A stretch of DNA of 64,000 nucleotides from Octopus bimaculoides (Eukaryota): NCBI RefSeq assembly GCF_001194135.2, contig NC_068985.1:35446014-35510013 (forward strand), given 5' to 3'. Positions 1,451 to 21,345 of this stretch are shown here, piece by piece (position 1 is the stretch's first letter; each line of letters opens with the position of its first letter). A program made the translations under genes and the position numbers. Below the pieces are notes generated by a model. It was not told the origin of the DNA. It ran no database searches and saw nothing but the letters and a program-made list of their open reading frames with translations.

Positions 1451-1501
1451 ATGTGAATGACCTTTATGCTAAAGTCAATAAACCAAACAAGGAAACCTAT
1501 G
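1451..1501 (+). CDS. Micro-exon A1 (51 nt, phase 1-1): DVNDLYAKVNKPNKETY
   Basis: ttttaattacttaaAG|atgtgaatgacctttatgctaaagtcaataaaccaaacaaggaaacctatg|GTAAGC. Open frame, homologous to four other intact 51-nt copies. Confidence 0.75.
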
Positions 1502-3640
1502 GTAAGCATAATTACATTCAGTTCGTTAAGAAATATAAACTTCAAGCAGTATTAACTGGTACATATAACAGAGAAAATTTGTGTTCTTATGGGACAATCT
1601 GCTGAGGTTGAAAGTACAAATCAGTGGCTGGTGCAAGGTCCCAAATAAAAACCACAAAGTAACACATAAAATACTACTTTGGAAATTACCATAACAGATA
1701 ATAGACAGGTTTGGAAAGTGTGAAAGTAAGGGATCTTTTATATAGAACCAAAGACTCATGAAGGTCCAGCCTCAGAAACTACACCAATATGAGAGAATTA
1801 TGATCAGTGGATCGAACCAAGGTGTGTTGTGACAACCAAGAGGAACTGGTTTTAATTATGATTGCTGGACAAACCTATGTTAGTATCGACAGTGGATGAT
1901 CAATGATAATGATGATAACATAAATTAAGCAAAGAGTTAGCAAATATTTAGGCCAATTTTTCTTACAAGAGTTCGAGAGTTATTAACTAACATATATGGG
2001 AAAAATTATATATCTAAGACGGATTACAACAGAAGGAAATCTGTAGCTTTTATGGAGCCACATGCTGAAATCTAAAGATTAGATAAGTGGTTGGTGCAAA
2101 GTGACACACAGTGAGACAATATTATAGGTAGCACCATAACAAGTAAAAGACTTGTAGAAAGGAGGCAATAGAGAAAATATAAAATAACTAAAGAGAAGCT
2201 AAATTTTGGCTGTAAATAGCAAAAGGAGGGGCAAAAAAAGCAGAAGTTGCATGTATTGTGCAAGATGAGGATCAAACATGCAAGTTTATCCAAATTGTCT
2301 GACAGTCTGCAAGAGAGAAGTCACACTTTGTAAATGTATAGAATAACAATGGCTTCCTCAGTTTTACTGATGCATATGTAAAGAGTGAATTTATTCCAAG
2401 TAGAAGCAGAAGGGCTACCAGCATTCCAGTTTTACAGTATCATGACAGTGCAATTAAAGAATGAAAATGTAGGAAATGTAGCTGGTCCCTTGAGACTAGA
2501 TATTTAGAGATTCATGAATCACTGGAAGTTTTTATTAAGAATAGGATTTACCTGTATATGCCAGGAAGCTGTATCATTGAGCTCATATTCCAAATGAAAT
2601 AACTACAAAGAACTACTTAGCTAGAAGGAAGTTCGTATATCAAGCATATGTGAATTTGGAAAAAGGGACAACCCTTTAACTGAGTAATTCACTATCTGAT
2701 CTGGTAGATTCTAAGGAAACTGGACTTACATGAACTGGTTGTGTTAGCCATAAAAACCATGTGCAGAATCATTTTGGGTAAGGTGAGTGATAGCAATGAA
2801 TTTAGTATGCACATGGGGTTTATCAGGACTCAGTGCTCAGCCATCCTGCTTATTTAGGCCTCCAAACTATGAAAGAGATATTCTCAACAACAAACCTTGG
2901 AAACAACTGTATGCTAATGACTGTTGATCAATTATTCTTTTACTTGTTGCAGTCGTTTGACTGCAGACATGCTGGTGCACTGCTCTTTAGTCGAAGTGTG
3001 GAAGTAAGGGAACTTTATATAGTACCAAAGACTTCAAGGTCCAACCTCAGAAACTACACCAAAATGAGATGATATGAGAGGGTTATGATGTGGATGAAGC
3101 CAAGGTGTGTTGTGATAGCAAAGAGGAACTGATTTAAATTATGATCACTTGACAAACCTAAGCAGGACATCAATAGTAGTTGATCAATGATGATGCTTAT
3201 GGTGTGACTAATGATAACAAAATAAATTAAGCAAAGAGTTAGCAAATATTTGGTCAATTTTCCTTTAACTANNNNNNNNNNNNNNNNNNNNNNNNNNNNN
3301 NNNNNNNNNNNNNNNNNNNNNNNNNNNNNNNNNNNNNNNNNNNNNNNNNTTTACATTTATTAATCCTTAATTGTACTTCACTATCCCACTCAATATTTTT
3401 TATTGTTTATTTTGTATTAATTTGGTAATGATAATCTGAGCTAAATGGGGAAAATAATATTATATTACTAATTCCTACTTACACAACTTTGAATGTGTGT
3501 GTGTGTGTGTAAGAGTGAATGTTTTTCATCAATATTTGTTCTGATATTTTCAATACATCCTAAATATATTTTAAATGTTATCTATAATCATGTCATTATT
3601 TTTTAACACCTTAAATTTGTGGTCAATCATTATCCTAAAG

Positions 3641-3667
3641 ACAATACAGGCAGGAAGAAACCTGCTG
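3641..3667 (+). CDS. Candidate micro-exon B1 (27 nt, phase 1-1): DNTGRKKPA
   Basis: Homolog of the A exon whose original acceptor reads aaT instead of aaG. Internal AG at 3639-3640 and donor GTAAGC at 3668 give an in-frame 27-nt exon. Confidence 0.4.
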
Positions 3668-3835
3668 GTAAGCATCATTATGTTCAGTTCATTAATATAA
3701 CTAACAAGAGTTTGAGATGTATTAACTAACATATATGAAAATATAAAATTTAATAATAAGGATAGAAATTGATATTAATCAATTAAAACCAGTGGTCCAG
3801 CATTTTTAAAAAATCCGAAGATTAAAATTATGTTA

Positions 3836-4012
3836 CGTACACAAATAAGAGGAATGACCAGCAAAAGTGGACTCCTATATGTTAGAAATAGATGCCGAAT
3901 CATCTAACCACGAAGAATACTGAGAACATATTCTTTGTGGTTAGATGATTCGGCATCTATTTCTAGCATATAGGAGTCCACTTTTGCTGGTCATTCCTCT
4001 TATTTCAGTATG
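3836..4012. mobile_element. TA-flanked foldback MITE / long hairpin
   Basis: 77-nt arms 3843-3919 and 3929-4005 are reverse complements with 2 mismatches around a 9-nt loop. TA at 3834-35 and 4013-14. Absent from the other array units. Confidence 0.75.
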
Positions 4013-5272
4013 TAATATATGATAATATATATGACAAAAATTATATATCTAAGACAAATTATAACAGAAGAAAATCTTCAGCTTTTATGGCACCATGTAC
4101 TGAACTCTATAGATTAGATAAGTGACTGGTGCAAGGTGGCACACACTGAGACAATATTTTAGGTAGCACCATAAAAGGGGGCAATAAAGAAAATATCAAG
4201 CAACTAAAAAGAAGCTAAATGTTGACTATACGTAGCGTAAGGAAAGGCAAAATAGCAAAAGTTGGCATATATTGTACGAGATGAGGATCAGACATGCGAG
4301 GCCATCCAAATTGACACAATATTTACAAGGTAGAAGAGACACTGGATAGATGTATAGAATAACAATGCCTTCCTAAGTTTTACTGATACCAAACATAAAG
4401 AGACTAAGTTTATTCCAAATAGAAGCAGAAGAGCTACCAGCATTCCAGTTTTACAGTGTTATGACAGCACAATTAAACAATGTAAAGATAGGGAAAGTAG
4501 CTGGTCTCTTGGGACTAAATATTTAGAAATTTGGAATATCCATGGGTTATTAGAAAGTTGATTAAGAATAGGATTAACTTGGATATGCCAAGAAGCTGTA
4601 TCATTGAGATCATATTCCAAATGAAATAACTACAAAGAAGTATTTAGCTAGGAGTAAGCTCCTATACCAAGCATTTGTGAATTTGGAGAAAGGAACAAAC
4701 CCTTTCACTTAGTCATACACTATCTGATCTGGTAGCTGCTAAGGAAACTGGTTTTTGATGAATTGGTTGTTTCAGCCATATAAGCAATGTGCAGAATCGC
4801 TGTGAGCAAGGTGAGTGATAGCAATGAATTTAGTGTGCATATGGGGGTTTATCAAAACTCAATGCTCAGCCTTTCCTGTTTCCTTAGGTCCCCAAGCTAT
4901 AACTTTCAAAACACCTGTATGCTGATGATTCTGCTTTTATGTCAGAATCTGTAGAAAAACTGGGTCAGATAGAAATTTCAAACATGAGAGTAAAATCTGC
5001 ATTTGAAGGGCATTAACTTTAATCTAGCAAAATATAGGAAGAAAGACTGGACTCAGGTACCATCAGGAAAATGAATGTGCTCTTTATGCTGGAAATGAGC
5101 AAGTAGAAATTTTATAAGGTGTCCCCAGTGTAAACAATACATACATTCCTGCTTATACTTCTTTGAACATTTATGTACATGAGGGAGCGAGTGTTTTTCA
5201 TGAATATTAGTCCTAGTACTTTCAGCACAGCATTAATATATTTAAATCATATCTTTCTTTAATTTCTTAAAG

Positions 5273-5323
5273 ATGTGGAAGAACTTTATGCTAAAGTTAA
5301 CAAACCAAGTGTGAAAACTCATG
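5273..5323 (+). CDS. Micro-exon A2 (51 nt): DVEELYAKVNKPSVKTH
   Basis: tctttctttaatttcttaaAG|atgtggaagaactttatgctaaagttaacaaaccaagtgtgaaaactcatg|GTAAGC. Confidence 0.75.
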
Positions 5324-6791
5324 GTAAGCATAATTATATTCAGTCCATTCATAAAACTATATAAACTTCAAGGGATATTAACTGATACATATAACAAGTT
5401 GATTAAGAATAGGATTAACTTTGATATGCCAAGAAGCTGTATCATTGAGATTGTATTCCAAATGAAATAACTACAAAGAAGTACTTAGCTAGGAGTAAGC
5501 TCCTATACCAAGCATTTGTGAATTTGGAGAAATGGACAAACCCTTTCACTTAGTCATTCACTATCTAACTTAGTAGATGCTAGGGAAATGGGACTTAGAT
5601 GAATAGGTTGTGTGAGCCATACAAGCCATGTGCAGAATCATTTTGGGTAAGGTGAGTGATAGCAATGAATTTAGTATGCATATGGGGTTTATCAGGATTC
5701 AGTGCTCAGCATTCCTGCTTATTTAGGCCTCCAAACTATGGAAGAGGTGTTCTTAACAATTAACCTTGGAAACTAATGCATATGACTCTGTTGAACAATT
5801 ATTCTTTTACTTGTTGCAGTCGTTTGACTGCAGACATGCTGGTGCACTGCTCTTTAGTCGAAGTGTGGAAGTAAGGGAACTTTATATAGTACCAAAGACT
5901 TCAAGGTCCAACCTCAGAAACTACACCAAAATGAGATGATATGAGAGGGTTATGATGTGGATGAAGCCAAGGTGTGCTGTGATAGCAAAGAGGAACTGAT
6001 TTAAATTATGATCACTTGACAAACCTAAGCAGGACATCAATAGTAGTTGATCAATGATGATNNNNNNNNNNNNNNNNNNNNNNNNNNNNNNNNNNNNNNN
6101 NNNNNNNNNNNNNNNNNNNNNNNNNNNNNNNNNNNNNNNNNNNNNNNNNNNNNNNNNNNNNNNNNNNNNNNNNNNNNNNNNNNNNNNNNNNNNNNNNNNN
6201 NNNNNNNNNNNNNNNNNNNNNNNNNNNNNNNNNNNNNNNNNNNNNNNNNNNNNNNNNNNNNNNNNNNNNNNNNNNNNNNNNNNNNNNNNNNNNNNNNNNN
6301 NNNNNNNNNNNNNNNNNNNNNNNNNNNNNNNNNNNNNNNNNNNNNNNNNNNNNNNNNNNNNNNNNNNNNNNNNNNNNNNNNNNNNNNNNNNNNNNNNNNN
6401 NNNNNNNNNNNNNNNNNNNNNNNNNNNNNNNNNNNNNNNNNNNNNNNNNNNNNNNNNNNNNNNNNNNNNNNNNNNNNNNNNNNNNNNNNNNNNNNNNNNN
6501 NNNNNNNNNNNNNNNNNNNNNNNNNNNNNNNNNNNNNNNNNNNNNNNNNNNNNNNNNNNNNNNNNNNNNNNNNNNNTAATGATAAACTGAGCTAAATGGG
6601 GAAAATAATATTATATTATTAATCCCTGCTTATACAACTTTGAATGTATATGTGTATGCGGGAGTAAATTTTTTTTTTATTAATATTTGTTCTGATACTT
6701 TCAATACATCCTAAATATATTTTAAATATTATCTATAATCATGTCATTATTTTTTAACACCTTAAATTTGTGGTCAATCATTATCCTAAAG

Positions 6792-6818
6792 ACAATACAA
6801 GCAGGAAGAAACCTGCTG
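6792..6818 (+). CDS. Candidate micro-exon B2 (27 nt): DNTSRKKPA
   Basis: tatcctaaAG|acaatacaagcaggaagaaacctgctg|GTAAGC; upstream ancestral acceptor mutated as in B1. Confidence 0.4.
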
Positions 6819-7412
6819 GTAAGCATGAATATGTTCAGTTCATTAATATAACTAACAAGTGTTTGAGAGTTATTAACTAACATATTTGACGAAGATTATG
6901 TATCTAAGATTATAGCAGAGGAAAATCTGCAGCTTTTACTGAACCACATGCTGAACTCCATAGATTAGATAAGTGGCTGGTGTAAGGTGACCCACACTGA
7001 GACAATATTATAGGTACCACCATAGCAAGTGAAAGACTTTTAGAAAGAAGGCAATACTGAGAAGCTAAATTTTTGCTATACATAGCAAAGGTAAGGGCAA
7101 AAAAAGCAGAGGTTGCATGTATTGTGCAAGATGAGGATCAGACATGCAAGGGGATCCAAACTGACTAACAGTCTGCCAAATACAAGACAATATATGTAGA
7201 TGTATAGAATAACAATGGCTTCCTCCGTCTTACGTTACAATTTCTTACATATACAGCATTGAACATGTATGTGTATGAAGGAGTGATTGTTTCACATTGA
7301 TATTTATTCCGATAGATTCAATGCTTCATAAATATATTTTGAAAATTATCTATAGTCATATGTCATTTATTTTTTAAGTCTTTAATATTTGTGTTCAATT
7401 TTTATCCTAAAG

Positions 7413-7439
7413 ACAATACAAATAAGAAGAAACCTGCTG
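7413..7439 (+). CDS. Candidate micro-exon B3 (27 nt): DNTNKKKPA
   Basis: aatttttatcctaaAG|acaatacaaataagaagaaacctgctg|GTAAGC. Confidence 0.4.
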
Positions 7440-7988
7440 GTAAGCATCATTATGTTCAGTTCATTAATATAACTAACAAGAGTTTGAGAGGTATTAACTA
7501 ACGTATATGATAATATATATGACAAAAATTATATATCTAACATAGATTATAACAGAAGAAAATCTGCAGCTTTTATGGCACCATGTACTGAACTCTATAG
7601 ATTAGATAAGTGACTGGTGCAAGGTGGCACACACTGAGACAATATTATAGGTAGCATCATAACAAGTGAAAGACTTGTAGAAAGGGGGCAATAAAGAAAA
7701 TATCAAGCAACTAAAAAGAAGCTAAATGTTGACTACACGTAGCGTAAGGAAAGGCAAAATAGCAAAAGTTGGCATATATTGTGCAAGATGAGGATCAGAC
7801 ATGCGAGGTCATCCAAATTGACACAATATTTACAAGGTAGAAGAGACACTGGATAGATGTATAGAATAACAATGCCTTCCTAAGTCTTACTGATACCAAA
7901 CATAAAGAGAGTAAGTTTATTCCAAATAGAAGCAGAAGAGCTACCAGCATTCCAGTTTTACAGTGTTATGACAGCACANNNNNNNNNN

Positions 7989-8286
7989 AGCAAGGTCGTT
8001 GCCAGTGCCGCCAGACTGACTCCCATGCAGATGGCACATAAAAAATACCTTTTTGAGTGTGGTCGTTGCCAGTACCGTGTGACTGACCCTCGTGCCGGTG
8101 GCACGTAAAAGCACCCACTACACTCTCGGAGTGGTTGGTGTTAGAAAGGGTATCCAGCTGTAGAAACTCTGCCAGATCAGATTGGAGCCTGGTGCAGCCT
8201 TCTGGCTTGCCAGTCCTCAATCAAATCGTCCAACCCATGCTAGCATGGAAAGCGGACATTAAGCGATGATGATGATGATGATGATG
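7989..8286 (+). mobile_element. Non-autonomous SINE-like element with (GAT)n tail (RTE-type 3' end)
   Basis: Ends ccaacccatgctagcatggaaagcggacattaagc(gat)n. Same family as 16835-17230 and 20746-21345. It interrupts one array unit. Confidence 0.8.
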
Positions 8287-8938
8287 AGTACTTAGCTAAG
8301 AGTAAGCTCCTATACCAAGCATTTGTGAATTTGGAGAAAGGAACAAACCCTTTCACTTCGTCATACACTATCTGATCTGGTAGCTGCTAAGGAGACTGGA
8401 TTTTGATGAATTGGTTGTGTGAGCCATATTAGCAATGTGCAGAATCACTGTGAGCAAGGTGAGTGATAGCAATGAATTTAGTGTGCATATGGGGGTTTAT
8501 CAAAACTCAATGCTCAGCCTTTCCTGTTTCCTTAGGTCCCCAAGCTAAAAAAGATGTATCTTAGATAACTTTCAAAACACCTGTATGCTGATGATTATGC
8601 TTTTATGTCAGAATCTGTAGAAAAACTGGGTCAGATAGAAATTCCAAACATGAGAGTAAAATCTGCATTTGAAGGGCATTAAATTTAATCTAGCAAAATA
8701 TAGGGAGAATGACTGGACTCAGGTACCATCAGGAAGATGAATGTGCTCTTTATGCTGGAAATGAGCCGGTAGAAATTTCATAAGGTGTCCCCAGTGTAAA
8801 CAATACATACATTCCTGCTTATACTTCTTTTAACATTTATGTACGTGAGGGAGTGAGTGTTTTTCATGAATATTAGTTCTGGAACTTTCAGCACAGCATT
8901 AATATATTTAAATCATATCTTTCTTTAATTTCTTAAAG

Positions 8939-8989
8939 ATGTGGAAGAACTTTATGCTAAAGTTAACAAACCAAGTGTGAAAACTCATG
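8939..8989 (+). CDS. Micro-exon A3 (51 nt): DVEELYAKVNKPSVKTH
   Basis: Identical in nucleotide sequence to A2, with the same AG acceptor and GTAAGC donor. Flanks nearly identical to A2 (recent duplication). Confidence 0.7.
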
Positions 8990-9828
8990 GTAAGCATAAT
9001 TATATTCAGTCCATTCATAAAACTATATAAACTTCAAGGGATATTAACTGATACATATAACACAGACAATCTGCTGGGGTTTCAAGCCGAGATTGTTGGC
9101 TGGTGCAATGTCCCAACTAAAAAACACAAAGTGACACATAAGATACTACTTTGAAAATTACCATAACAGATAACAGACAGGTTTAGAAAGTGTGAATGTA
9201 AGAGAGCATTAAATAGAACCAAAGACTCATGAAGTTCCAGCCTCAGAAACTACACCAATACGAGATGATATGAGAGAATTATGATCAGTGGATCAAGCCA
9301 AGGTGTGTTGTGACAACCATGAGGAACTGGTTTTAATTATGATGGCTTGACAAACCCATGCTAGCATTGACAGTGATTGATCAATGTGATGACAATGGTG
9401 GCAATGATGATGACAAGATAAATTAAGCAAAGAGTTAGCAAATATTTAGGTCAATTTTCCTTGCAATAGAGATAACACTGTAATATAACCTACATAACAC
9501 AAACATTTATAAATGTGCATTTTGCACTACATGTAAACATATATTTTCAGGTGTATTAGCAATTTCTACCTTTATTAATCATTAATTGTACTTTATTTTA
9601 TATCTCAATGTATTTTTATTTGTTTGTTTTTTCTTTTAATTTGGTAATGATAATCTGAGGTAAATAGGGAAAATAATATTATATTACTAATTCCTGCTTA
9701 TGTAGATGTGCATGAGAGGGTGAATGTTTTCCATTAATATTTGTTCTGATACTTTCAATACATCATTTTAAATGTTATATTTTAAATGTTATCTAGAATT
9801 ATATGTCATTATTTTAAAACACCTTAAG

Positions 9829-9855
9829 TCAATAGAAGTAGGAAGAAACCTGCCG
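9829..9855 (+). CDS. Candidate micro-exon B4 (27 nt): VNRSRKKPA
   Basis: ttttaaaacaccttaAG|tcaatagaagtaggaagaaacctgccg|GTAAGC. The Tyr-encoding 5' part is deleted, leaving a clean acceptor and an in-frame 27 nt. Confidence 0.5.
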
Positions 9856-11224
9856 GTAAGCATCATTATGTTCAGTTCATTAATATAACTAACAAGAGTT
9901 TGAGAGGTATTAACTAACATATATGATAATATATATGACAAAAATTATATATCTAACATAGATTATAACAGAAGAAAATCTGCAGCTTTTATGGCACCAT
10001 GTACTGAACTCTATAGATTAGATAAGTGACTGGTACAAGGTGGCACACACTGAGACAATATTTTAGGTAGCATCATAACAAGTGAAAGACTTGTAGAAAT
10101 GGGGCAATAGAGAAAATATCAAATAACTAAAAAGAAGCTAAATGTTGGCTATACGTAGCATAAGGAAAGGCAAAATAGCAAAAGTTGGCATATATTGTGC
10201 AAGATGAGGATCAGACATGCGAGGCCATCCAAATTGACGGACAGTCCGCAAGAGAGAAGACACACTGTTTAGATGTATAGAATAACAATGGCTTTCTCAA
10301 TCCTACTGATGTCAAAAGTAAAGAATGAATTTATTCCAAGTAGAAGCAGAAGAGCTAGCAGCATTCCAGTTTTACAGTATCATGACAGTGCAATTACAGA
10401 ATGAATAGGTAGGAAATGTAGCTGGTCTCTTGAGACTAGATATTTAGAGATTTACAATATTCATGTATCACTGGAAATTTGATTAGCAATAGGATTAACT
10501 TGGATATACCAAGAAGCTGTATCATTGAGATCATATTCCAAATGAAATAACTACAAAGAAGTACTTAGCTAGGAGTAAGCTCCTATATCAAGCATTTGTG
10601 AATTTGGAGAAAAGGACAACCCTTTGATTGAGTAATTCACTATCTGATTTGGTAGATTCTAAGGAAACTGGACTTACATGAACTGGTTGTGTGAGCCATA
10701 AAAACCATGTGCAGAATCACTGTGAGCAAGGTGAGCAATCACAATGAATTTAATGTGCACATGGGGTTTATCAGGAATTAGTGCTCATCCTTTCCCGTTT
10801 ATTTAGGCCTCCAACTTATCAAAAGTGTATTTTAGACAACCTTCAAACACTTGTATGCTGATGACCTAGCTTTTATGACAGAATCTGTAGAAAAATTGGG
10901 TCAGACAGAAATTCCAAACTCGATAGCAAAATCTGCATTTAAAAGATTTTAAATTGAATCTAGTAAAAACACATTTTTTACCCCATAGGAAGAAAGACTG
11001 AACTCATATCCTATCAGGAAAATGCATGTGCTTTTTATGTAGGAAATGAGCAGGTAGAAATTTCATAAGGTGTTCCCAATGTAAAGAATGAATACTTAAG
11101 TTCCTGCTTATACTTCTTCGAACATTTATGTATTAGAGGGAATGAACGTTTCTCATTAATATAAGTTCTGATACTTTCAGCACAGCATTGATATATTTTA
11201 AATAAAATCTTTGATTCCCTAAAG

Positions 11225-11247
11225 ATGTGAATGACCTTTATGCTAAA
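11225..11247 (+). pseudogene. Broken A-type exon copy (DVNDLYAK, donor lost)
   Basis: AG|atgtgaatgacctttatgctaaa, then an abrupt join to spacer sequence (cagtggataaac) with no GTAAG donor. Confidence 0.65.
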
Positions 11248-11672
11248 CAGTGGATAAACAATGAAGATGGTTATAGTGGCAATGATAACGATGGTGGTGA
11301 TAAGAAGAATTAAGCAAAGAGTTAGCAAATATTTAGCCCTTTTTTTCCTTTGAGTAGAAATAAGTTATATAACCTTATATATGAACAAAAAATCATAATT
11401 GTTCATTTTGCAGTATTCCTATCATAAGCTTTACTCTTGTAGATTTTCAAATTTATCTTTAACATTTTCTACCTTTATTCTTCTTTAATTGTACTTTACA
11501 CCATTCGGTGTTTTTTTTTTCTGTTAATTTCATAATAGTATTGAGATGTAAATGGGGAAAATAATATAATATTGTTAATTCCTGTTGTTAGTTCTGTTAC
11601 TTTCAGCACAACATAAATATATTTTAAACAATATCTATAATTGTATGGGATTTATTTTTTAATTTCTTAAAG

Positions 11673-11723
11673 ATGTGAATGATCCTAATGCTAAAGTCAA
11701 AAAACCAAGCAAGAAACCTGAAG
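11673..11723 (+). CDS. Micro-exon A5 (51 nt, Tyr lost): DVNDPNAKVKKPSKKPE
   Basis: ttttttaatttcttaaAG|atgtgaatgatcctaatgctaaagtcaaaaaaccaagcaagaaacctgaag|GTAAGC. Confidence 0.7.
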
Positions 11724-12235
11724 GTAAGCATGATTATACTCAATTTATTAATATAACTAAATATATCTACGGAGGTATTATCTGGCACATGAGAATAAAA
11801 ATGAGAATGTACATACTTACAACATGACAGAAAACTTAAATGCTTATCTGAGTTTTAGAGTGGCCTGTGATAAGTCCCAAATAAACATAAGGTGACATGA
11901 GATGAAGTACTACTGTATACAGCACCATAACAGCTAAGAAACAAGATTGTAAAAACTAGGTGGTAATGAAGTATTATGCTGTACTAGAACAGACTCAAAG
12001 GCTCAATTCCTAGGTAAACTTGGAGAAATCTATGTCAAAATAAGAGGAGCAGTATTTATGAAATATACCAAAAGTATGGCACATACATATATAAATATAG
12101 GTATAAATGCATGTATGTGTGTATATCTGAGGCCTATGTAAAATTGCACCTGCTAAGTCATCATCTACTGCTCCTTTTGCCAATTTCATGCCACCACCCT
12201 CCATTTCATCTCTTCTACTCACTGTTCCATGCTAC

Positions 12236-14760
12236 CTCTTAAAAGATTTGAAAGCATTGGATCTGTGTATATTCAGTATTTAGTACCCTTTTCTATATCT
12301 AACATCCATATTATACTTCTCCTCCCTTCTCTAATTATCTATAGGTCCCAGCCTGAAAGTCCTCTGGAACAGACCAGTTGATTCTCATCAATGCCCAGAA
12401 TTTCATTGAATGTTGTCACACTTACACACCACTAATTCTCTATAGAACACTAAAGTGGAACTTCCAACTGCATTGCCCAATTGACAGGAGACTCTGAGTA
12501 CCTGAAGACACTCTAAGTACTAGGTGCTCTGCTTTAGTCTACTCTTGATCTACAACCACAACTCAGTCAAAGAAATAGGCTGTGGAAGAGCAAATCTGAC
12601 AAACAGCAACCCCACCTTCTTACTAACAAGAAAACATTGGGGATGTCATAGCCTCAATGCAAGTCTGTGTATCAGCAGCCACGACATGCCCAGTCCTCTA
12701 TTCAGCAGGTGTTGACAGCAAATGGAGTGCTTGACCAGTGGAGAATATCCCCTCCAGTTTGGTCACACACAAACTAGGGTGAGGCATGATGGTCAGGCAG
12801 TAATATATGATGTAGACAATATATGCATTCACCACTTCTGCCTGATCTTTCAGAAACAACTTTCTCTCAGCCCATTTCTGAGTGAGATTGGCCACCCTGC
12901 ATTCAAAATGTAAAAGACCTCAGAAAAAATACTGCAATGGAATTTGTCCAATGCACCAGTGATTTTTCTCTATCTGGAGGTCCAGACCAAACCAAAACCC
13001 AAGTAATTTAACTAATCCCTCCATCCAGCATCCCATGACATTATTGGATGGCATGGACTTGCCTCTCCAGATGCCAAACTTTAAGCCCACTGACTGTCCT
13101 CAGTTAATTTTTGCTCCTGTCATTGCTTCATATTCTTTTAGAACAGTGCCAATCAGGTTCATGTTCAACACTATGACAGTGACGTCATAAGCATATGCTG
13201 ACTCAGTTCTCCCACTTCCTGGTTCACATTGGATGTTTTTCGATGCTTCCAGTTTCCACAGTAGTTGCCTTAAAGTCAACACATACAGAATAGATGAGAG
13301 GAGACACCCTTGGCAAGCCAAGTACATGGTGCTGAATAGTTCCAATAAGTAACCAATCATCCAGTCTATTGAGCAGATGTCATTGTACATTGCAGCAATC
13401 CAACCATTGTAAATGGGACTGAAACTGGCCACCATGAGAATAGCCACCAAATATTGGTGGTCGACCCTATTATTGAAGGCTATTGATCAATCCAAATTGA
13501 TCAGGTGTCACCCATGCCAGCTTCTTTATCTACTATGTCTATGATATATCACATAAGGTGGAGGTTGTCATGGACAGAGCTGCTTAGAATGGTACATGTT
13601 TGCACATCCCCAATCAGCTCCTTGACAAGCACCAACTTTTTGATATCACTTTGACCAAATTTTTTTAATCTGCATTCAGCTGCATAATGGGTCTAAAATG
13701 TTCTATTTGATGCCCCTTGTTTGAGTCCTTTCTTAGCAGTGCCACCACTCCTTGACCTACAGAACTAGGAATTCTCCCATTCTGCTGCCAGTTGTGGCAG
13801 ATATATGCTAAGAGGCCACCAAACAAGTCGGGCATATGAAAGTAAATTTCATAGGGCAGGCCATCCAAACCAGGCAATTCGCCCCCCACTTCCATGCAGC
13901 ATCCATGATTGCATCTTGTATTTTTGGGACTGTTGTCAGCCTTTTGTGATGCTCCACCCACCTTAGCAAGAGTGGGTGGAGCATCAAGGTAGGCACTGAA
14001 GATCCATCCTGCATTCCAGACTGCCATTCATCCCAATCAGCTGAGTGAAGTCCTGTTGAAATGCTGCAATCATCTGCTCAGGTTCAAGTACCATGCATCC
14101 ATTTTGGTTCACCAAAAACCAAATTGTGGCTTTGTTGCCACATTGTGCCTCTTCCACTGAGGCCCATCAGATGGTTTTTGTTCCTTCGTTTCTTAGAGCA
14201 TGCATCTTAGCTTTGATAAGGCATTCTTCATGCTTAGTGTTGAAGAACTTGTCCAGGGACAATCTCATCATGAGCACATCAGTTTCAGTGCCTTTCTTAA
14301 GCACCTCTAAGTTACCCTCTATTTTATTTCTTTGTTACTAATGCCTTACTAAACCTAATGGATTCTGCTCTAATTGCCCTTTTCAGAGCAAACTACCAAT
14401 TGTTGTTGAGGACTGACTCCATCAGCGCCTGCTTAACTAATACACAGATCCAGTATGTAGGTTTGGCATGCCAAAAGTGATGCATTCAGCTTCCTGTAGC
14501 CAACTCCCTGCCTATGAGGCCTATTTAGGTCAACTGTGTAGATCGCAAGTTTATGGTCTGTGTAACTGACAATAGCTTTCGGCATTGTCATTGAGTGTTT
14601 TATTGCCTTTTCTTCCATAGAGAATCTTACCTTTACTGTACCATACCTTCTTCCTCTGGTGATGTAACTTTTAATAATCCAGACTGGTCTTAGACATTTT
14701 TCTATGTCTTTTTCTGTAAACATTTTTCCATGCCTTTTTCTGTCATCTGTTCTAATTCTT
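12236..14760 (-). mobile_element. Decayed L1/Tx1-clade LINE (ORF1/EN remnant + RT)
   Basis: Minus-strand peptides LPGLDGLPYEIY..FGGLLA..NWQQNGRIP..GVVALLRKD..FRPI (RT N-terminal) and SYTDHKL..GVGYRKLNASLL (APE endonuclease C-terminal); many stops and frameshifts. Confidence 0.8.
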
Positions 14761-15398
14761 TTGTTTTAATAGTAATTTTTCTATAAGTAACCGTATTTGG
14801 TTTTGTCTTTTGTTGGACACAGAACAGGATTGTTAACATTGTGTCTTACGTGTTTCATTAACATGTATTTTGCTTGTTTTAATTTATCTACCAGGATAGT
14901 GATTTTTTCTCTTGTAATCAGTGGACAATATTAGCAAAGGCAGTGATGGGTGAGTTGTCTGTTGTGTCTTCTTATTGTGGTTGCAGCAAAGGGGAAAAAT
15001 GTTGGCTTGTTGGTCAGACAGTTTTAAATGCACAAATCATTTTCACATCTTTCTTTCTGTAGAGGTTCTTGTTGATTTCATGTTCTTTCTCATTTGTTTA
15101 GTTATTGCTATTTTTAGTATTGTGGTTGTTATTGTTTTGATTGGCACTGACTGTGGTAGTAATGGTGGTGGTGCTGGTGATGCTGATTTGAGCTGGTCAA
15201 AAGCTCTCCAAGTATTTCTAAAATTTTTGGTTGATTCAAAAGTTTACTCAAATATTTTTTTGTATCATCCTTCTGTAAGCTAACAAATCTTTGAGAAGTT
15301 AGCTTCATCTAATTTCAGCCCTTTGGTGTCTAAAACTGTTTATCATTTTCAGACTGACCATGTTTGAAATAACAATAATAATAGTAATAATAATAATG

Positions 15399-15697
15399 AC
15401 AAGAGCACTCAGAGAACACAAACCTCCACCAAGGCAACACCAACGTTTTAAAATATCTGAAATAAACTCAACTGCTCTCAAAAATGAAGTAAAAGACAGG
15501 AAAAATAATCCAGAATCCTTGTCCAGAACCGGATCAATTCCAGAATGTAATCAGTTCACGCCAGTCATGAGGCCAAACATCCTTGAAAGTTTCATCCAAA
15601 TCCATCCAGCAGTTTTTGAGATGACTTGTTCACGGACAAACAAACAATCAAGCATGACTGAAAACAATACCCCCACCTTCGCTTAGGTGGAGGTCAT
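15399..15697 (+). mobile_element. Short non-autonomous element, HINE/Helentron-like ends
   Basis: 5' acaagagcactcagagaacacaaacctccaccaagg. 3' hairpin ccacct-tcgctt-aggtgg. Subterminal inverted repeat acctccacc/ggtggaggt. Sits in an (AAT)-rich tract. Confidence 0.5.
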
Positions 15698-15859
15698 AAT
15701 AATAATTTATACCTCTCAATCTTTCTCTAAATTATTTTGTATGTTCCTAAAATAAAAGGGGGAAAATAATGCAATATTGCTAATTCCCACAATGTTTGTT
15801 TGTACTCATTCTGTGATTAAGTACCTACTGAAGAAATTAAAGGTAAATGAATGACTACT

Positions 15860-16530
15860 GAGGGCCATGCCACCCATGTAGAGAAGCTCAGTCAAGAAGG
15901 TGAAAACCAGCAATGAGTTCAGTGATGAATCTAATGTGCCTGTAGGGATTTATCAGGGCTCAGTTCTCAGCCTTTCCTGTTTATTACAGGCCTCCAAGTC
16001 ATAACTGAGGAATTTGAGGCCAGCTATCATTAGGAACTCTTGTATACTGATGGTTTAGCTCTTACAGCAGAATCTGTTGAAAAACTAGAGCAGAAGTTCT
16101 TGACATGGAAGCTAAACCTAGAATTGAAGAACCTTATATCAAACTTTGAGAAAAATTAGCATTTTAATAAGTATGCAGGAAAGGACTCCGGAGGAATTCT
16201 GTGATGTGAGCCTAGTGTAAAAGGTAAGCAAAGGTGACATGAGATGTAGTGGGGTAATATGTAGGTTAAAGTAGAAGGCAAATTTCATGTACAGAAGGAT
16301 CATTAGAGTAACAAACACTGAAAAGCTCTCAGGATGTAGATTCTCTCAAATGCCCAGATGTCTCCTTAGAAGTAGCTGATAACCTTTGTTACCAATCTGT
16401 CTTAACAGCCAAAAAGGTTGCAAAAAAGTTCAGGGAGTTATCATCTTTGTTGGGAACAAAGGGATTCTCTCCAAAAATGAAGGGCAGATTTTCTAATGTT
16501 GATATGCAGAGTCCAACACTGCACACTTTT
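15860..16530 (+). mobile_element. Decayed RTE LINE RT fragment upstream of exon A6
   Basis: Translates in pieces to GIYQGSVLS..ITEEFE..ELLYTDGLALTAESVEKLEQKFLTWKLNLE..KFRELSSLLGTKGFS. Confidence 0.8.
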
Positions 16531-16720
16531 TTACTTAATTTATGTGATTTCCTAAGGTAAATGAGAAATATAATATAATATTGCTAATTACTACTTATAC
16601 TACTTTATATATGTAAGAGAGTGAATATTTTTTATTAATATTTATCCTGGTACTTTCCATACTACATTAAAATATTTTAAATGTTATTTATAATTATGCC
16701 ATTTTTTTAATTCCTTAAAG

Positions 16721-16771
16721 ATGTGGATGATTTTTATGCTAATGTCAATACACCAAGCATGAAACCTGATG
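16721..16771 (+). CDS. Micro-exon A6 (51 nt): DVDDFYANVNTPSMKPD
   Basis: atttttttaattccttaaAG|atgtggatgatttttatgctaatgtcaatacaccaagcatgaaacctgatg|GTAAAC; phase compatible with the 17941 exon. Confidence 0.75.
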
Positions 16772-16834
16772 GTAAACACGATTATATTCAATTCATTAAT
16801 ATAACTACATTCATTTAGCAACAAGTTAGTAAAT

Positions 16835-17230
16835 CATCATCGTTTAACGTCCGTTTTCCATTCTTGCATGGGTTGGACGGTTTGACTGAGGACTAGCAAG
16901 CCAGTAGGTTGCATTAGGCTCCAATCTAATCTGGCAAGATTTCTACAGCTGAATGCCCTAGCTAATGCCAACCAATCCGACAGTGTAGTCGGTGCTTTTT
17001 ATGTACCACTGGAATGGAAGCCAGTCAGGCAGCACTGGCATCAACCATGTTCGGATGGTGCTTTTTATGTGTCACCTTGCACAGGTGCCAGTCAGGGGCA
17101 CTGACATTGACCATGTTCGGATGGTGCATTTTATGTGCCACTGGCACAGGGAGCCAGTCAGGCAGCACTGGCATTGACTCACCCTAAATGGTGCTTACTA
17201 CGTGCCACCAGCACGGGTGCCAGTCAGGTG
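16835..17230 (-). mobile_element. SINE-like element, (GAT)n-tailed family with internal ~70-bp repeats
   Basis: catcatcatcgtttaacgtccgttttccattcttgcatgggttggacgg is the reverse-complemented tail; repeated ggtgctttttatgtg(t/c)cac units. Confidence 0.8.
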
Positions 17231-17940
17231 GCACTGGCATTGGCTACAACTCCGATTTCCATTTTGATTTTCATTTTAATTTTCTGTGTGTAGAATAAGC
17301 AGCTTAATGTTCCATGTATGAACATATTTACATAAAACTTTGAAAATTCCATTGCATATATAATAAACATCTTGCAGGAATTCACATTAACTCCGATACT
17401 TTACACATTTATTTATTCTTACTAGTTCATAAACTAACATTATGTTCACTAGACAAGAAAATCAAAGTATAGAAGAGATTTACAATGGTGAATTTCACAT
17501 CTTGAGCAACTACTGTTGTTGAGTACCCACCATCAGTCCTGCTTATGGACATCTCTTACATGAAAGTAATGTTGAAAAATAGTGAACAGATTCTCTTAAT
17601 GGTAATTTTAGTACTTTTAAATATCAATAAAATATTTGAGCGACAGAAATAGTAGAAGGCAATACTAAATACTTGGGCATATTCAATTTAGTCCCACTGC
17701 ATTCTGAGCTCAAATCCCATTGATATCAGTTTTGACTTTCATCTTTCTCTGATCAACATAATAAATATCAATGGTATTCTAGATTGACTGTCTCCTAATT
17801 TGTATCTACTGTCAAAAATTGCTATTTTTTAATGCTGCTTATATGATTGCTTTTCTTTTTGATAAGTTTTGTATTAATAGTATGTGTTATGTTTACTATA
17901 TTTTATATTCAACTGTTATATTCTACATGTCTAAAAACAG

Positions 17941-17990
17941 AAGATGGTAGCATGAATGACAATTATGAGAGCAACAATCAAAGTAATGAG
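17941..17990 (+). CDS. Penultimate coding exon (50 nt, phase 1-0): EDGSMNDNYESNNQSNE
   Basis: ctaaaaacAG|aagatggtagcatgaatgacaattatgagagcaacaatcaaagtaatgag|GTAAAT. Bridges phase-1 A exons to the phase-0 terminal exon without a stop. Confidence 0.7.
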
Positions 17991-18337
17991 GTAAATCCAT
18001 AAATATATTTTAATTTTCTTTTATAGTGGTTATATCGAGATATTATCTTCAAAAAATTATTTAAAGATGTGTTTTTTACTGTCCTTTTCTTAAAGGTAGA
18101 TAATAGAGCAGTTGAGATAAGTTTAAATTATTCCTTCATATTGTTATTTTTGCATTTAATACTGTATGTGAAAACCAAACAGTGTTTTATTGATTTTTCA
18201 TATTTCTTTAATAATGATGTATTAAAAATGTATACTTCTAATATGTTTAAATGTCTGTTTATAAATTTAAAAATGTTCTGATATATAATTGTTTATACTT
18301 GTAGTATGTCATTGTGTTTTTTTTTAATTCAATTTAG

Positions 18338-18463
18338 CCTGAATCTGTTCAAGAATGTAATTATGCAGAACTTGAGTTTAGAAACGATCCTGGACCAAGC
18401 AAACCAGTACCAAAACCTAAAGAAGAAGAAACTATTTATGCTGATCTAATATTGGACTGTTAA
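18338..18463 (+). CDS. Terminal coding exon: PESVQECNYAELEFRNDPGPSKPVPKPKEEETIYADLILDC* (ITIM/ITSM-like tyrosine pair)
   Basis: T-rich tract + tttAG at 18336-37, 41 open codons then TAA, exon-like composition in very AT-rich surroundings; ATTAAA at 18508-18513. Confidence 0.8.
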   Translation, partial: PESVQECNYAELEFRNDPGPSKPVPKPKEEETIYADLILDC

Positions 18464-20482: not shown

Positions 20483-20745
20483 GTAAGAGGAGAGATATAA
20501 AATCTAGGCAGATACCAAATTTCGCTCTGTAAAATTCCAAGGCTGGTTCCTTCAGATAATGCATTTTTGGTAAACTTCCTGTAATTCCCATCTGATGTTA
20601 CAGTTTCTTTCTTGACTATTTAGAGTGTAAAGTACAATATTGATAATAAGGAGAATGAAGAATTCGATCAGTCAAACTTTATGTTTATTTCCAGTTAGTT
20701 TATTCATAATAATTGCCCTACATGTGTTTTGATCACACTAACTGC

Positions 20746-21345
20746 ATCATCGTCATCATCATCGTTTAACGTCCGCTTTCCATGCTAACATGGGTTGGAC
20801 GATTTGACTGAGGACTGGTGGACCAGAAGGCGACACCAGGCTCCAATCTGATTTGGCAGAGTTTCTACAGCTGGATGCCCTTCCTAACGCCAACCACTCC
20901 GGGAGTGTATTGGGTGCTTTTACGTGCCACCGGCACGAGGGCCAGTCAGGTAGGTACTGGCAACGGCCATGCTCGAAATGGTGTATTTTATGTGCCACCT
21001 GCACAGGGCCAGTCCAGGGGCACTGGCAACAATCTCACTCGGATGTCTTACTGGCAAAGGCCACGCTCGAAATGGTGTATTACATGTCACCTGCACAGGG
21101 CCAGTCCATCGGCACTGGCAACGATCTCACTCGAATGTCTTTTCACGTGCCAGGAAAGCAACGTTGGTAACGATCCACGGCCACACTCGAAATGGTGTAT
21201 TTTACGTGTCACCTGCACAGGAGCCAGTCCATCAGCACTGGTAACGATCTCGCTCGAATGACTTTTCATGTGCCACTGGCACAAGTGCCAGGAAGGCGAT
21301 GTTGATAACGATCACGCTGGTGCTATTTATGTGCCACCGGCACTT
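20746..21345 (-). mobile_element. SINE-like element, (GAT)n-tailed family, with an expanded internal ~70-bp tandem repeat
   Basis: catcatcgtcatcatcatcgtttaacgtccgctttccatgc, followed by about 6 copies of ..ctcgaaatggtgtattttatgtgccacctgcacagggccagtc..ggcactggcaacg.. Confidence 0.85.

What the first reader, a model, noticed from the sequence alone, without database searches (positions are those of the whole stretch)
1451..18463. Hidden gene 3' end built from tandemly amplified tyrosine-motif micro-exons (LYAKVNK repeats)
Seen: five intact 51-nt phase-1 exons (1451, 5273, 8939, 11673, 16721), each with an AG acceptor and a GTAA donor. They keep length and frame while the surrounding repeat is full of indels. 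They splice in frame to exons 17941-17990 and 18338-18463, giving DVNDLYAKVNKPNKETY-DVEELYAKVNKPSVKTH-DVEELYAKVNKPSVKTH-DVNDPNAKVKKPSKKPE-DVDDFYANVNTPSMKPD-EDGSMNDNYESNNQSNE-PESVQECNYAELEF..ETIYADLILDC*. The ORF track misses all of this. Known: acidic-(L/I)-Y-A-x-V is a Src-family substrate/SH2 docking context, and YAKVNK matches the Helicobacter CagA EPIYA-A segment (EPIYAKVNKKK); phosphorylated EPIYA-A/B segments bind Csk. Inference: this is the cytoplasmic tail of a cephalopod receptor/adaptor in which one exon equals one SH2-docking module, so signalling valency can change by exon copy number or skipping. The N-terminal part lies upstream of the window.
Basis: partly seen in the sequence, partly recalled or inferred. 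Interest (0 to 1): 0.9.

Follow-up and report, generated by a model that had tools for sequence, protein, structure and literature searches.

The report
Amplified tyrosine-motif micro-exons, octopod receptor tail
The window holds the real 3' end of a cephalopod immunoglobulin-type membrane receptor gene, whose cytoplasmic tail is built from 51-base exons that each carry one tyrosine docking motif; this species has at least five such exons where a related octopod has two, but whether all five reach the mRNA is untested.

Summary
There are five 51-nt phase 1-1 segments with an AG acceptor and a GTAAGC or GTAAAC donor. A 50-nt exon and a terminal exon ending in TAA follow in frame. A full HMMER scan found a homologue, Argonauta hians GAB1598814.1. 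It is a 906-aa protein with several Ig domains and one transmembrane helix, and its tail is colinear with the composite peptide (45% over 84 aa). Its gene uses the same exon plan: two 51-nt phase 1-1 exons, a 56-nt exon and a terminal exon. Between the two species only these exons plus about 16 nt of flank align; the introns do not. So the exons are real coding exons of a receptor tail.

The three assembly gaps are intronic and colinear with an ungapped sister unit, so frame is not at stake, but copy number could be.

Some points are weaker than claimed. Young copies diverge as fast as their introns. Decayed copies without an acceptor also keep 51 nt and an open frame. One module has lost its tyrosine, and two modules are identical.

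SH2/Csk docking and tunable valency remain inference. The CagA likeness is motif-level only. This is a new variant of a known design, the Ig-superfamily receptor with an ITIM/ITSM-type tail encoded by small exons.

The parts
1451..1501 (+). Module exon 1, 51 nt, phase 1-1: (D)VNDLYAKVNKPNKETY
   Evidence: Letters and frame. Aligns to the A. hians coding exon L001 47665-47715 with the same boundaries.
5273..5323 (+). Module exon 2, 51 nt, phase 1-1: (D)VEELYAKVNKPSVKTH
   Evidence: Against exon 1, the LYAKVNKP core has 0 non-synonymous and 2 synonymous changes.
8939..8989 (+). Module exon 3, 51/51 identical to exon 2. Product of the latest duplication (2793-5396 matches 5662-9062).
11673..11723 (+). 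Module exon 4. Splice sites and frame are intact but the tyrosine motif is lost: (D)VNDPNAKVKKPSKKPE
   Evidence: Aligned to the P0001 tail in the BLASTP alignment.
16721..16771 (+). Module exon 5: (D)VDDFYANVNTPSMKPD. This is the copy nearest the constant 3' exons.
17941..17990 (+). Penultimate exon, 50 nt, phase 1 to 0: (E)DGSMNDNYESNNQSNE
   Evidence: Colinear with the A. hians 56-nt exon L001 47886-47942, VSTGNDNDIYENNQHINNK.
18338..18463 (+). Terminal coding exon: PESVQECNYAELEF...ETIYADLILDC, stop TAA at 18461-18463. It carries two tyrosine motifs 25 residues apart.
   Evidence: 72% nucleotide identity to the A. hians terminal exon L001 51688-51819. Tyr at positions 9 and 34 in both species.
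3617..3667 (+). Decayed copy of the module exon. Acceptor AG changed to AT, donor kept; 51 nt, open frame, HYPKDN.
6768..6818 (+). Decayed copy, 50/51 identical to the copy at 3617.
7389..7439 (+). Decayed copy, acceptor lost, FYPKDN.
9803..9865 (+). Decayed copy with an internal deletion. Only the 3' half and the donor are recognisable.
11220..11249 (+). Truncated copy: acceptor plus the first 26 nt of the exon, then joined to a SINE-related block.
3272..3349 (.). Assembly gap 1, inside the intron between exons 1 and 2.
   Evidence: The flanks 2994-3265 and 3352-3745 map to 9188-9462 and 9567-9933 of the ungapped unit, which lie 104 nt apart.
6062..6576 (.). Assembly gap 2, inside the intron between exons 2 and 3, at the position homologous to gap 1.
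   Evidence: The flanks map to 2793-3194 and 3426-3738, and to 9188-9390 and 9645-10028.
7979..7988 (.). Assembly gap 3 (10 N, length unknown), intronic, at the edge of a SINE insertion (7991-8283).
   Evidence: The left flank matches 4091-4471 and 9995-10388. The right flank is a SINE, then 8287 onward matches 4639 and 10560.

Best explanation
Shown:
- Window 1451-18463 (+ strand) carries the last seven coding exons of a gene. That gene is homologous to Argonauta hians GAB1598814.1, a type-I membrane protein with about eight Ig-like domains and one transmembrane helix.
- The exons encode a low-complexity cytoplasmic tail (its disorder is assumed, not tested) made of 17-residue modules. Each module is one 51-nt symmetric (phase 1-1) exon with the core acidic-x-(L/I/F)-Y-A-x-V-N.
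- The modules are followed by a short Tyr-containing exon and a terminal exon. The terminal exon has an ITIM-like motif and an ITSM-like motif exactly 25 residues apart in both species.
- In the window's species, tandem segmental duplications of 2.7-5 kb units multiplied the module exon. These units also carry SINE pieces.
- The result is five spliceable copies (four with Tyr, two identical), four decayed copies and one truncated copy. A. hians has two copies 476 nt apart.

Inferred:
- After receptor engagement, Src-family kinases phosphorylate the tyrosines. The pY-A-x-V modules then recruit SH2 proteins of the Csk/SHP type, and the terminal motif pair recruits a tandem-SH2 phosphatase. On this reading the protein is an inhibitory or scaffold receptor.
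- Because every module exon is symmetric and a multiple of three, gain, loss or skipping of an exon changes the number of docking sites without breaking the frame.
For: - The letters, frames and splice dinucleotides are as stated.
- The pattern occurs 6 times against 0 expected.
- A full HMMER scan of 1.84 billion representatives gave P0001 at E 2.3e-8. P0001 is a named A. hians protein with Ig_3, I-set and C2-set_2 domains and a TM helix.
- BLASTP gives 45% identity over 84 aa (E 4e-15 for the pair), running colinearly through three of the proposed junctions.
- In the A. hians locus the two IYAxVN modules are 51-nt exons at 47138-47188 and 47665-47715, with AG acceptors and GTAAGC or GTGAGT donors. 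A 56-nt exon and the terminal exon follow them.
- blastn of the window against that locus aligns only the module exons plus about 16 nt of flank, the terminal exon, and SINE families. The introns do not align.
- The Tyr-Tyr spacing of 25 residues is conserved.
- The gaps are intronic and colinear.
- Literature: pY in E-x-L-Y-A (p140Cap EPLYA/EGLYA) and EPIYA (Pragmin) binds the Csk SH2 domain (PMC3561454, PMC3593179). A mollusc Ig-superfamily receptor with two ITIMs signals through SHIP2 (PMC11841013).
- From my own knowledge, not checked here: the optimal Csk SH2 motif is pY-(T/A/S)-(K/R/Q/N)-(M/I/V/R), which pYAKV fits. ITIM-ITSM pairs about 25 residues apart (PD-1, PECAM-1) bind SHP-2.
Against: - There is no transcript evidence of any kind.
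- Within the window the young exon copies are not better conserved than their introns: exon 76% against flanks 82-86% (Fisher p = 0.32). pN/pS is about 0.5-1.
- Decayed copies lacking an acceptor also keep 51 nt and an open frame, so intactness alone is weak evidence of use.
- One module lacks Tyr.
- The ITIM-like motif has Cys at position -2, which is not canonical.
- The N-terminal part is not in the window, so a truncated or partial gene copy cannot be excluded.
- The two word-index searches that could have found close relatives found none, so the family comparison rests on one protein from one species.
Confidence: 0.7

Rival explanations
1. Only the 3'-most module exon (16721), perhaps with one neighbour, is spliced together with the two constant exons. 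On this reading the upstream copies at 1451-11723 are silent or rarely used pseudo-exons. They would sit in a long, repeat-rich intron and be drifting towards the state of the decayed copies.
For: - Young copies diverge at the intron rate or faster, and overall pN/pS is near 0.5-1.
- Four decayed copies and one truncated copy show that copies in this array do die.
- Exon 11673 has already lost its tyrosine.
- A. hians manages with two modules.
Against: - All five copies keep the AG, the GT, the 51-nt length and the frame.
- Every decayed copy has lost its AG.
- The LYAKVNKP core shows only synonymous change between exons 1 and 2, while the rest of the exon changes faster than the intron (core against non-core p = 0.02). 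That pattern is expected of a used motif with free spacers.
- The intron motif after the donor is conserved in all five copies and in A. hians.
Confidence: 0.3
2. The copy number is partly an assembly artefact. The identical exons 5273 and 8939 would be one unit placed twice (haplotypes or mis-scaffolding across the gaps at 6062-6576 and 7979-7988). Alternatively, further units are hidden in the gaps.
For: - Two gaps lie between the identical exons.
- The exons plus 60 nt downstream and 22 nt upstream are 100% identical.
- The 10-N gap has no measured length.
Against: - Further out the two units differ by 3-9% and by indels, a SINE insertion (7991-8283) and an extra decayed copy (7389). That is more than I would expect between two haplotypes (my judgement, not measured here).
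- Both sides of each gap are colinear with an ungapped sister unit.
- Short-read assemblies tend to collapse such repeats rather than expand them.
Confidence: 0.12
3. The window holds only a partial 3' duplicate of the receptor gene, a dead tail fragment without Ig or TM exons upstream. In that case nothing here is expressed as a receptor.
For: - No upstream exon is visible.
- The repeat blocks run to the first base of the window, so the context is unknown.
Against: - The terminal and penultimate exons are intact, with a conserved stop position region, conserved motifs and conserved spacing.
- In A. hians the tail exons lie 8-14 kb downstream of the TM exon. It is therefore expected that the TM exon falls outside a window that starts 1.4 kb before the first visible module.
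Confidence: 0.07
4. The segments are not coding at all. They would be a non-genic long-period repeat or transposon fragment that happens to have an open frame and AG/GT ends.
For: - The array carries SINE pieces.
- Open 51-nt frames are not rare in AT-rich DNA.
Against: - The same 51-nt unit with the same boundaries is an annotated coding exon of an Ig receptor gene in another octopod.
- It is one of the very few stretches that align between the two loci.
Confidence: 0.02

Closest known systems
Argonauta hians GAB1598814.1, 'uncharacterized protein LOC115212114' (locus L001)
   Same: The tail is colinear (45% over 84 aa). The gene has the same 51-nt phase 1-1 module exons, the same short phase 1-to-0 exon, and the same terminal exon with two Tyr 25 residues apart.
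   Different: It has two module exons 476 nt apart, against at least five spread over 15 kb with decayed copies. Whether the two genes are orthologues or paralogues is unknown, because the window lacks the ectodomain exons.
PECAM-1 (CD31) and other vertebrate Ig-superfamily receptors with paired ITIM/ITSM tails (PD-1, SIRP-alpha, CD22, FCRL)
   Same: A multi-Ig ectodomain, a single TM helix and a tail presumed disordered (low complexity; not tested). Two tyrosine motifs lie about 23-25 residues apart and recruit tandem-SH2 phosphatases (PECAM-1 motifs and disorder: PMC5314882). The tail is encoded by several short exons that can be spliced out; this last point is my own knowledge of the PECAM-1 and FCRL genes (isoforms: PMC4950983).
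   Different: There is no specific sequence relationship beyond generic Ig domains. The vertebrate genes do not carry a tandem array of near-identical motif exons. The -2 residue of the first motif here is Cys.
Oyster CgNCAM1, an Ig-superfamily receptor with two ITIMs that signals through SHIP2 (PMC11841013)
   Same: A mollusc Ig-type membrane receptor with an inhibitory-type tyrosine-motif tail. It shows that this kind of signalling exists in the phylum.
   Different: It has a different domain plan (3 Ig + FN3). No repeated YAxVN modules are described, and no homology was tested here.
Host EPIYA-like Csk-docking motifs: Pragmin EPIYA, p140Cap EPLYA/EGLYA (PMC3593179, PMC3561454)
   Same: An acidic residue, then a hydrophobic residue, then Y-A. 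EELYA in exons 2 and 3 resembles p140Cap EPLYA/EGLYA. Phosphorylation creates a Csk SH2 site in those proteins.
   Different: Those are single motifs in cytoplasmic adaptors, not exon-modular receptor tails. The window modules have no Pro at -2. Binding is untested.
Bacterial EPIYA effectors, including H. pylori CagA (named only)
   Same: A tyrosine motif repeated in a disordered region, with copy number changed by duplication and a Y-A-x-V context (EPxYAxV, PMC3593179).
   Different: These are bacterial proteins with no introns and no shared ancestry among themselves. According to that review they mimic host motifs. The resemblance to the window modules is a few residues long.

Membership tests
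Octopod Ig-receptor gene family of A. hians GAB1598814.1 (LOC115212114-like) | Significant, colinear sequence similarity of the tail | tested here: met
   E 2.3e-8 against 1.84 billion proteins. BLASTP gives 45% over 84 aa.
Octopod Ig-receptor gene family of A. hians GAB1598814.1 (LOC115212114-like) | Same exon plan: 51-nt phase 1-1 module exons, a short phase 1-to-0 exon, and a terminal exon with the stop | tested here: met
Octopod Ig-receptor gene family of A. hians GAB1598814.1 (LOC115212114-like) | Signal peptide, about eight Ig-like domains and a TM helix upstream of the tail | not testable with these tools
   No Ig or TM exon is present in the window. The upstream sequence is outside the window, and no cephalopod genome collection is on hand.
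ITIM/ITSM-bearing inhibitory receptors (functional class) | ITIM consensus (I/V/L/S)-x-Y-x-x-(I/V/L) | tested here: inconclusive
   CNYAEL here and CVYADL in A. hians have Cys at -2, which is not canonical, but the rest fits. The modules (DLYAKV, ELYAKV) have an acidic residue at -2.
ITIM/ITSM-bearing inhibitory receptors (functional class) | ITSM consensus T-x-Y-x-x-(V/I) | tested here: inconclusive
   TIYADL in the window has Leu at +3. TIYADI in A. hians fits fully.
ITIM/ITSM-bearing inhibitory receptors (functional class) | Two motifs about 20-30 residues apart in a cytoplasmic tail | tested here: met
   Tyr at positions 9 and 34 of the terminal exon in both species.
ITIM/ITSM-bearing inhibitory receptors (functional class) | Tyrosine phosphorylation and recruitment of SHP-1/2, SHIP or Csk | not testable with these tools
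   This needs experiments.
EPIYA-type motifs | Literal E-P-I-Y-A core (or the EPxYAxV context) | tested here: not met
   The modules read NDLYAKV, EELYAKV and DDFYANV. There is no Pro at -2 and Glu at -3 only in exons 2 and 3. The Y-A-x-V part is present in four modules (motif definition from PMC3593179).
EPIYA-type motifs | Phosphorylation-dependent binding of the Csk SH2 domain | not testable with these tools
   This needs a peptide pull-down.
Tandem duplicated exon arrays with mutually exclusive splicing (Dscam type) | Only one exon of the array is included per transcript, enforced by frame or by competing RNA pairing | not tested
   The exons are symmetric multiples of three, so frame does not enforce exclusivity, and A. 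hians includes both of its copies in one protein. RNA pairing was not examined.

The most novel reading that the evidence does not exclude
The most novel reading is a lineage-specific, still-growing array of symmetric micro-exons. Each would encode one promiscuous Y-A-x-V phosphotyrosine docking site, letting an octopod Ig receptor set its SH2-binding valency by exon copy number and exon skipping.

The same 17-residue (D/E)x(E/D)x-L-Y-A-x-V-N-K-P module also turns up, with the same 17-residue (51-nt) period, in an intersectin-like SH3-RhoGEF gene of another, unidentified eukaryote. The core motif turns up again in a third unknown C-terminal tail, there in units about 47 residues long. The module would then be a portable SH2-docking cassette, either spread by exon shuffling or reinvented convergently.
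Probability: 0.2. Interest if true: 0.65.

Novelty: new variant of a known kind. Interest (0 to 1): 0.45.

Why it matters
If the exons are all used, this is a clean natural example of signalling valency evolving by copy-number change of a single-motif exon. An invertebrate immune-type or adhesion-type receptor would then carry 2 modules in one octopod and at least 5 in another, with decayed copies recording the turnover.

It would also give cephalopod biology a candidate inhibitory Ig receptor. Very little is known there about the regulation of haemocytes and other cell types by phosphotyrosine signalling.

It would further show that the Y-A-x-V context, reported as underrepresented in mammalian proteomes and exploited by bacterial effectors (PMC3593179), is used repeatedly by an animal's own receptor.

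If only the last module is used, the region is an ordinary gene 3' end with a repeat-laden intron.

Tried and rejected
1. A word-index protein search with the 143-aa composite found nothing. The homologue appeared only in the full HMMER scan.
2. P0002, the second hit of that scan, is a 2599-aa repeat protein matched through NYAENG-like repeats. I judged it spurious.
3. A search with P0001 itself found no relative but itself, so no family alignment could be built. A 51-column profile of three concatenated modules gave only one weak hit, P0004 at E 0.088.
4. I tested whether the sequence after the truncated copy at 11220 (…EDGYSGNDND…) is a decayed penultimate exon, which would mean the duplication unit once held two exon types. 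This is rejected. An HMM of that block hits SINE copies in the window and in the A. hians locus, not 17941-17990 or L001 47886-47942.
5. I tested whether the exons are conserved above the intron level within the window. This does not hold for the young copies.
6. The weak nhmmer hit at L001 48988-49038, a possible third A. hians copy, has no open frame and no motif.
7. PDB sequence search gave generic Ig-domain matches only: Robo, FGFR, MAG, Dscam.
8. No tRNA genes were found.
9. Literature: there is no paper on LOC115212114, none on ITIM receptors in octopus, and none on tandem exon duplication of tyrosine-motif tails.
10. The species of the window was not determined. It shares SINE families and this gene with A. 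hians, so it is an octopod-like cephalopod.

Full report
**1. The observation**

- The segments at 1451, 5273, 8939, 11673 and 16721 are each 51 nt.
- Each follows a T-rich tract ending in TTAAAG and is followed by GTAAGC (GTAAAC at 16772).
- Each is open only in the frame that begins with two bases of a codon and ends with one. Any of them joined to any other therefore gives G+AT = Asp and stays in frame.
- 17941-17990 (50 nt, AG ... GTAAAT) takes the frame from phase 1 to phase 0.
- 18338-18463 then reads through to TAA.
- The acceptor-plus-motif pattern is found six times on the + strand, against none in 100 shuffles.
- Tandem Repeats Finder sees no short-period array over these segments. 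The repeat is a long-period one, 2.7-5 kb between exons.

**2. The gaps**

The three N runs (3272-3349, 6062-6576, 7979-7988) lie in the proposed introns 1 and 2 and never touch an exon. Reading frame therefore does not depend on them.

I tested continuity by mapping the 400 nt on either side of each gap onto the other repeat units.
- Gap 1: its sides match 9188-9462 and 9567-9933 of the ungapped unit, on the same strand and 104 nt apart (the gap is estimated at 78).
- Gap 2: it sits at the homologous position of the next unit. Its sides match 2793-3194 and 3426-3738 at 91-95%.
- Gap 3: its left side matches 4091-4471 and 9995-10388. Its right side is a SINE copy followed by sequence matching 4639 and 10560, which is the expected order.

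The ungapped equivalent of gaps 1 and 2 holds no exon-like sequence. Order and orientation are therefore consistent. What remains open is the number of units, above all at the 10-N gap.

**3. The anatomy of the array**

- Three decayed copies lie at 3617-3667, 6768-6818 and 7389-7439. Their acceptor AG has become AT and the motif reads H/F-Y-P-K-D-N. Their donor, 51-nt length and open frame are kept.
- One copy at about 9803-9865 has an internal deletion.
- One copy at 11220-11249 has an intact acceptor and first 26 nt, then joins a SINE-related block.

The latest event duplicated 2793-5396 to 5662-9062 (91-97% identity). It produced the identical exons 5273 and 8939. There are thus four independent lineages of intact exons. 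One of them (11673) has lost Leu-Tyr.

Repeat blocks reach base 2 of the window, so more units may lie upstream.

**4. Are they exons? Evidence within the window is weak**

For the young pair 1451 and 5273, the exon is 76% identical. The near and far flanks are 82-86% identical (Fisher p = 0.32).

Nei-Gojobori counts give pN/pS of about 0.5 to above 1.

The only sign of constraint is inside the exon.
- The eight core codons L-Y-A-K-V-N-K-P show 0 non-synonymous and 2 synonymous differences.
- The other nine codons have changed faster than the intron. Core against non-core gives p = 0.02, and non-core against flanks gives p = 0.02.

For the older copies (11673, 16721) the exon (75-82%, no gaps) stands out against far flanks that no longer align.

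Keeping length and frame is not diagnostic, since the acceptor-less copies do so too.

**5. Evidence across species is strong**

The word-index search with the 143-aa composite found nothing. A full HMMER pass over 1.84 billion cluster representatives found three proteins.

The best hit is P0001 (E 2.3e-8).
- It is GAB1598814.1, 'uncharacterized protein LOC115212114 [Argonauta hians]', 906 aa.
- It has Ig_3, I-set and C2-set_2 domains, a transmembrane helix, and this tail...CNIYATVNESKKEPD DVGHIYALVNKSNKKPD VSTGNDNDIYENNQHINNK PEPVKECVYADLDF...QTIYADINMESLN.
- BLASTP aligns composite residues 58-139 with P0001 817-900 at 45% identity. The alignment runs straight through the junctions 11723/16721, 16771/17941 and 17990/18338.

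In the A. hians genomic locus (L001) the coding exons reproduce the protein.
- The signal exon and each Ig-domain exon recovered by tBLASTn match the protein (one Ig-domain exon, residues 565-648, was not recovered), as does the TM exon.
- The tail exons include two 51-nt phase 1-1 exons at 47138-47188 and 47665-47715. They have the same ...TTTAAAG acceptor and a GTAAGC or GTGAGT donor.
- A 56-nt phase 1-to-0 exon and the terminal exon follow.

blastn of the whole window against this 62-kb locus aligns only three things:
- the module exons with about 16 nt on each side,
- the terminal exon (72%),
- copies of shared SINE families.

That is the signature of conserved coding exons in diverged introns. 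The exons, their order and their phases are therefore real. tBLASTn with P0001 finds no Ig or TM exon in the window. In A. hians the TM exon lies 8-14 kb upstream of the tail exons.

**6. What it most likely does**

Shown:
- The tail is modular, with 17 residues per exon. A. hians has two modules and the window at least five.
- The terminal exon has two tyrosines at positions 9 and 34 in both species, in the contexts C-(N/V)-Y-A-(E/D)-L and T-I-Y-A-D-(L/I).

Inferred from established knowledge:
- An ITIM-like motif followed 25 residues later by an ITSM-like motif is the arrangement that engages the tandem SH2 domains of SHP-type phosphatases. PECAM-1 has paired ITIMs in a disordered tail (PMC5314882). 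The PD-1 spacing is from my own knowledge.
- Acidic residues before a hydrophobic residue and then Tyr suit Src-family kinases.
- pY-A-K-V fits the optimal Csk SH2 motif as I recall it from peptide-library work (not checked here).

Support from papers read here:
- The host proteins p140Cap (EPLYA, EGLYA) and Pragmin (EPIYA) bind Csk through such phosphotyrosines (PMC3561454, PMC3593179).
- An oyster Ig-superfamily receptor with two ITIMs signals through SHIP2 (PMC11841013).

I therefore take the protein to be an inhibitory or scaffold-type Ig receptor whose number of docking sites is set by the number of module exons included.

Whether all five are included is unknown. I put the rival, that only the 3'-most copies are used, at about 0.3.

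**7. The CagA likeness**

The point does not need it.
- The modules lack the Pro of EPIYA.
- Bacterial EPIYA effectors share no ancestry even with each other, and the literature regards them as mimics of host motifs (PMC3593179).
- The same review reports that EPxYAxV is underrepresented in mammalian proteomes. This makes repeated (E/D)-x-Φ-Y-A-x-V in an animal's own receptor mildly noteworthy, but it is a functional analogy only.

**8. Comparison and novelty**

The design is known from PECAM-1, CD22, FCRL and others: a multi-Ig ectodomain, one helix, and a low-complexity tail with tyrosine motifs encoded by small symmetric exons. The protein family is already annotated, though uncharacterised, in another octopod.

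What is new is the tandem amplification of a single-motif micro-exon, with visible birth (identical pair), divergence, motif loss and death (acceptor-less copies) inside one locus. I file it as a new variant of a known kind, with interest 0.45. It would rise if transcripts show variable inclusion.

**9. Things seen in passing**

The other two database hits carry the same motif in other settings.
- P0003 is on an ENA metagenome contig of 53% GC. It has four tandem 17-residue, 51-nt repeats D-E-E-S-L-Y-A-T-V-N-K-P-R-V-A-S-S inside one uninterrupted ORF. The ORF lies between coiled-coil, SH3 and RhoGEF pieces, an intersectin-like arrangement.
- P0004 is the C-terminal end of an unknown protein, with ...LDDMYAKVNKPTRS...VDDLYAKVNKPTRS...VEDLYAEVNS-stop. 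Its E-value of 0.088 is not significant.

Also noted: a conserved intron motif directly after the donor (G|GTAAGCAT-R-ATTATAT) is present in all window copies and, with minor changes, in both A. hians exons.

Noticed in passing
L002 1495-2202 (ENA ERZ25071132 contig; protein P0003): Four tandem 17-residue (51-nt) repeats DEESLYATVNKPRVASS lie in one uninterrupted ORF of a 53% GC eukaryotic contig. The ORF sits between a coiled-coil ORF, SH3 pieces and a RhoGEF piece, an intersectin-like arrangement. The core motif and the period match the window's module exons (10/17 identical to exon 5273). This could be shared descent (exon shuffling) or convergence.
   Followed up: partly
L003 about 560-985, frame 2 (ENA ERZ27262672 contig; protein P0004): This is the C-terminal end of an unknown protein, with units about 47 residues long carrying LDDMYAKVNKPTRS and VDDLYAKVNKPTRS and ending VEDLYAEVNS-stop. 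The 9-mer DLYAKVNKP is identical to window exon 1451. The match is not statistically significant (E 0.088).
   Followed up: partly
window 1502-1517, 5324-5339, 8990-9005, 11724-11739, 16772-16787; L001 47189-47204, 47716-47731: The intron sequence just after the donor is conserved well beyond the splice consensus (GTAAGCAT-R-ATTATAT). It is present in all five intact copies, in the decayed copies and in both A. hians exons, although the rest of the introns does not align between species. It may be a splicing regulatory element.
   Followed up: no
window 3617-3667, 6768-6818, 7389-7439: The decayed copies have lost the acceptor but contain an internal ...CCTAAAG|AC. If used, it would give a 27-nt exon, again phase 1-1, encoding DNT(S/G)RKKPA without tyrosine. 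This is arithmetic only.
   Followed up: no
window 7991-8283 (-), 16833-17115 (-), 20745-21030 (-); also 27142-27334: Copies of SINE-like families have many relatives (70-92% identity) scattered through the A. hians locus L001. This places the window in an octopod-like genome. A 66/133-nt tandem structure lies at 16991-17242, and a 92-nt one at 20955-21141.
   Followed up: partly
window 28177-28590, 50693-51346, 51574-52182 (+); 13100-14027 (-): These are broken non-LTR retrotransposon pieces with Pfam hits to Exo_endo_phos, RVT_1 and zf-RVT. The 13-14 kb ORFs on the minus strand look RT-like by eye but have no Pfam hit. They help explain the 5-kb intron between exons 11673 and 16721.
   Followed up: partly
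window 3272-3349 and 6062-6576: Two assembly gaps fall at the same position of two adjacent repeat units. This suggests that the assembler failed at the same repeat-internal stretch twice, rather than at random.
   Followed up: yes
window 18464-64000: No further exon of this gene family and no other recognisable host gene was seen downstream. The region holds seven more N gaps, long (TA)n, (AAT)n and (CA)n-type microsatellites, and transposon debris.
   Followed up: partly
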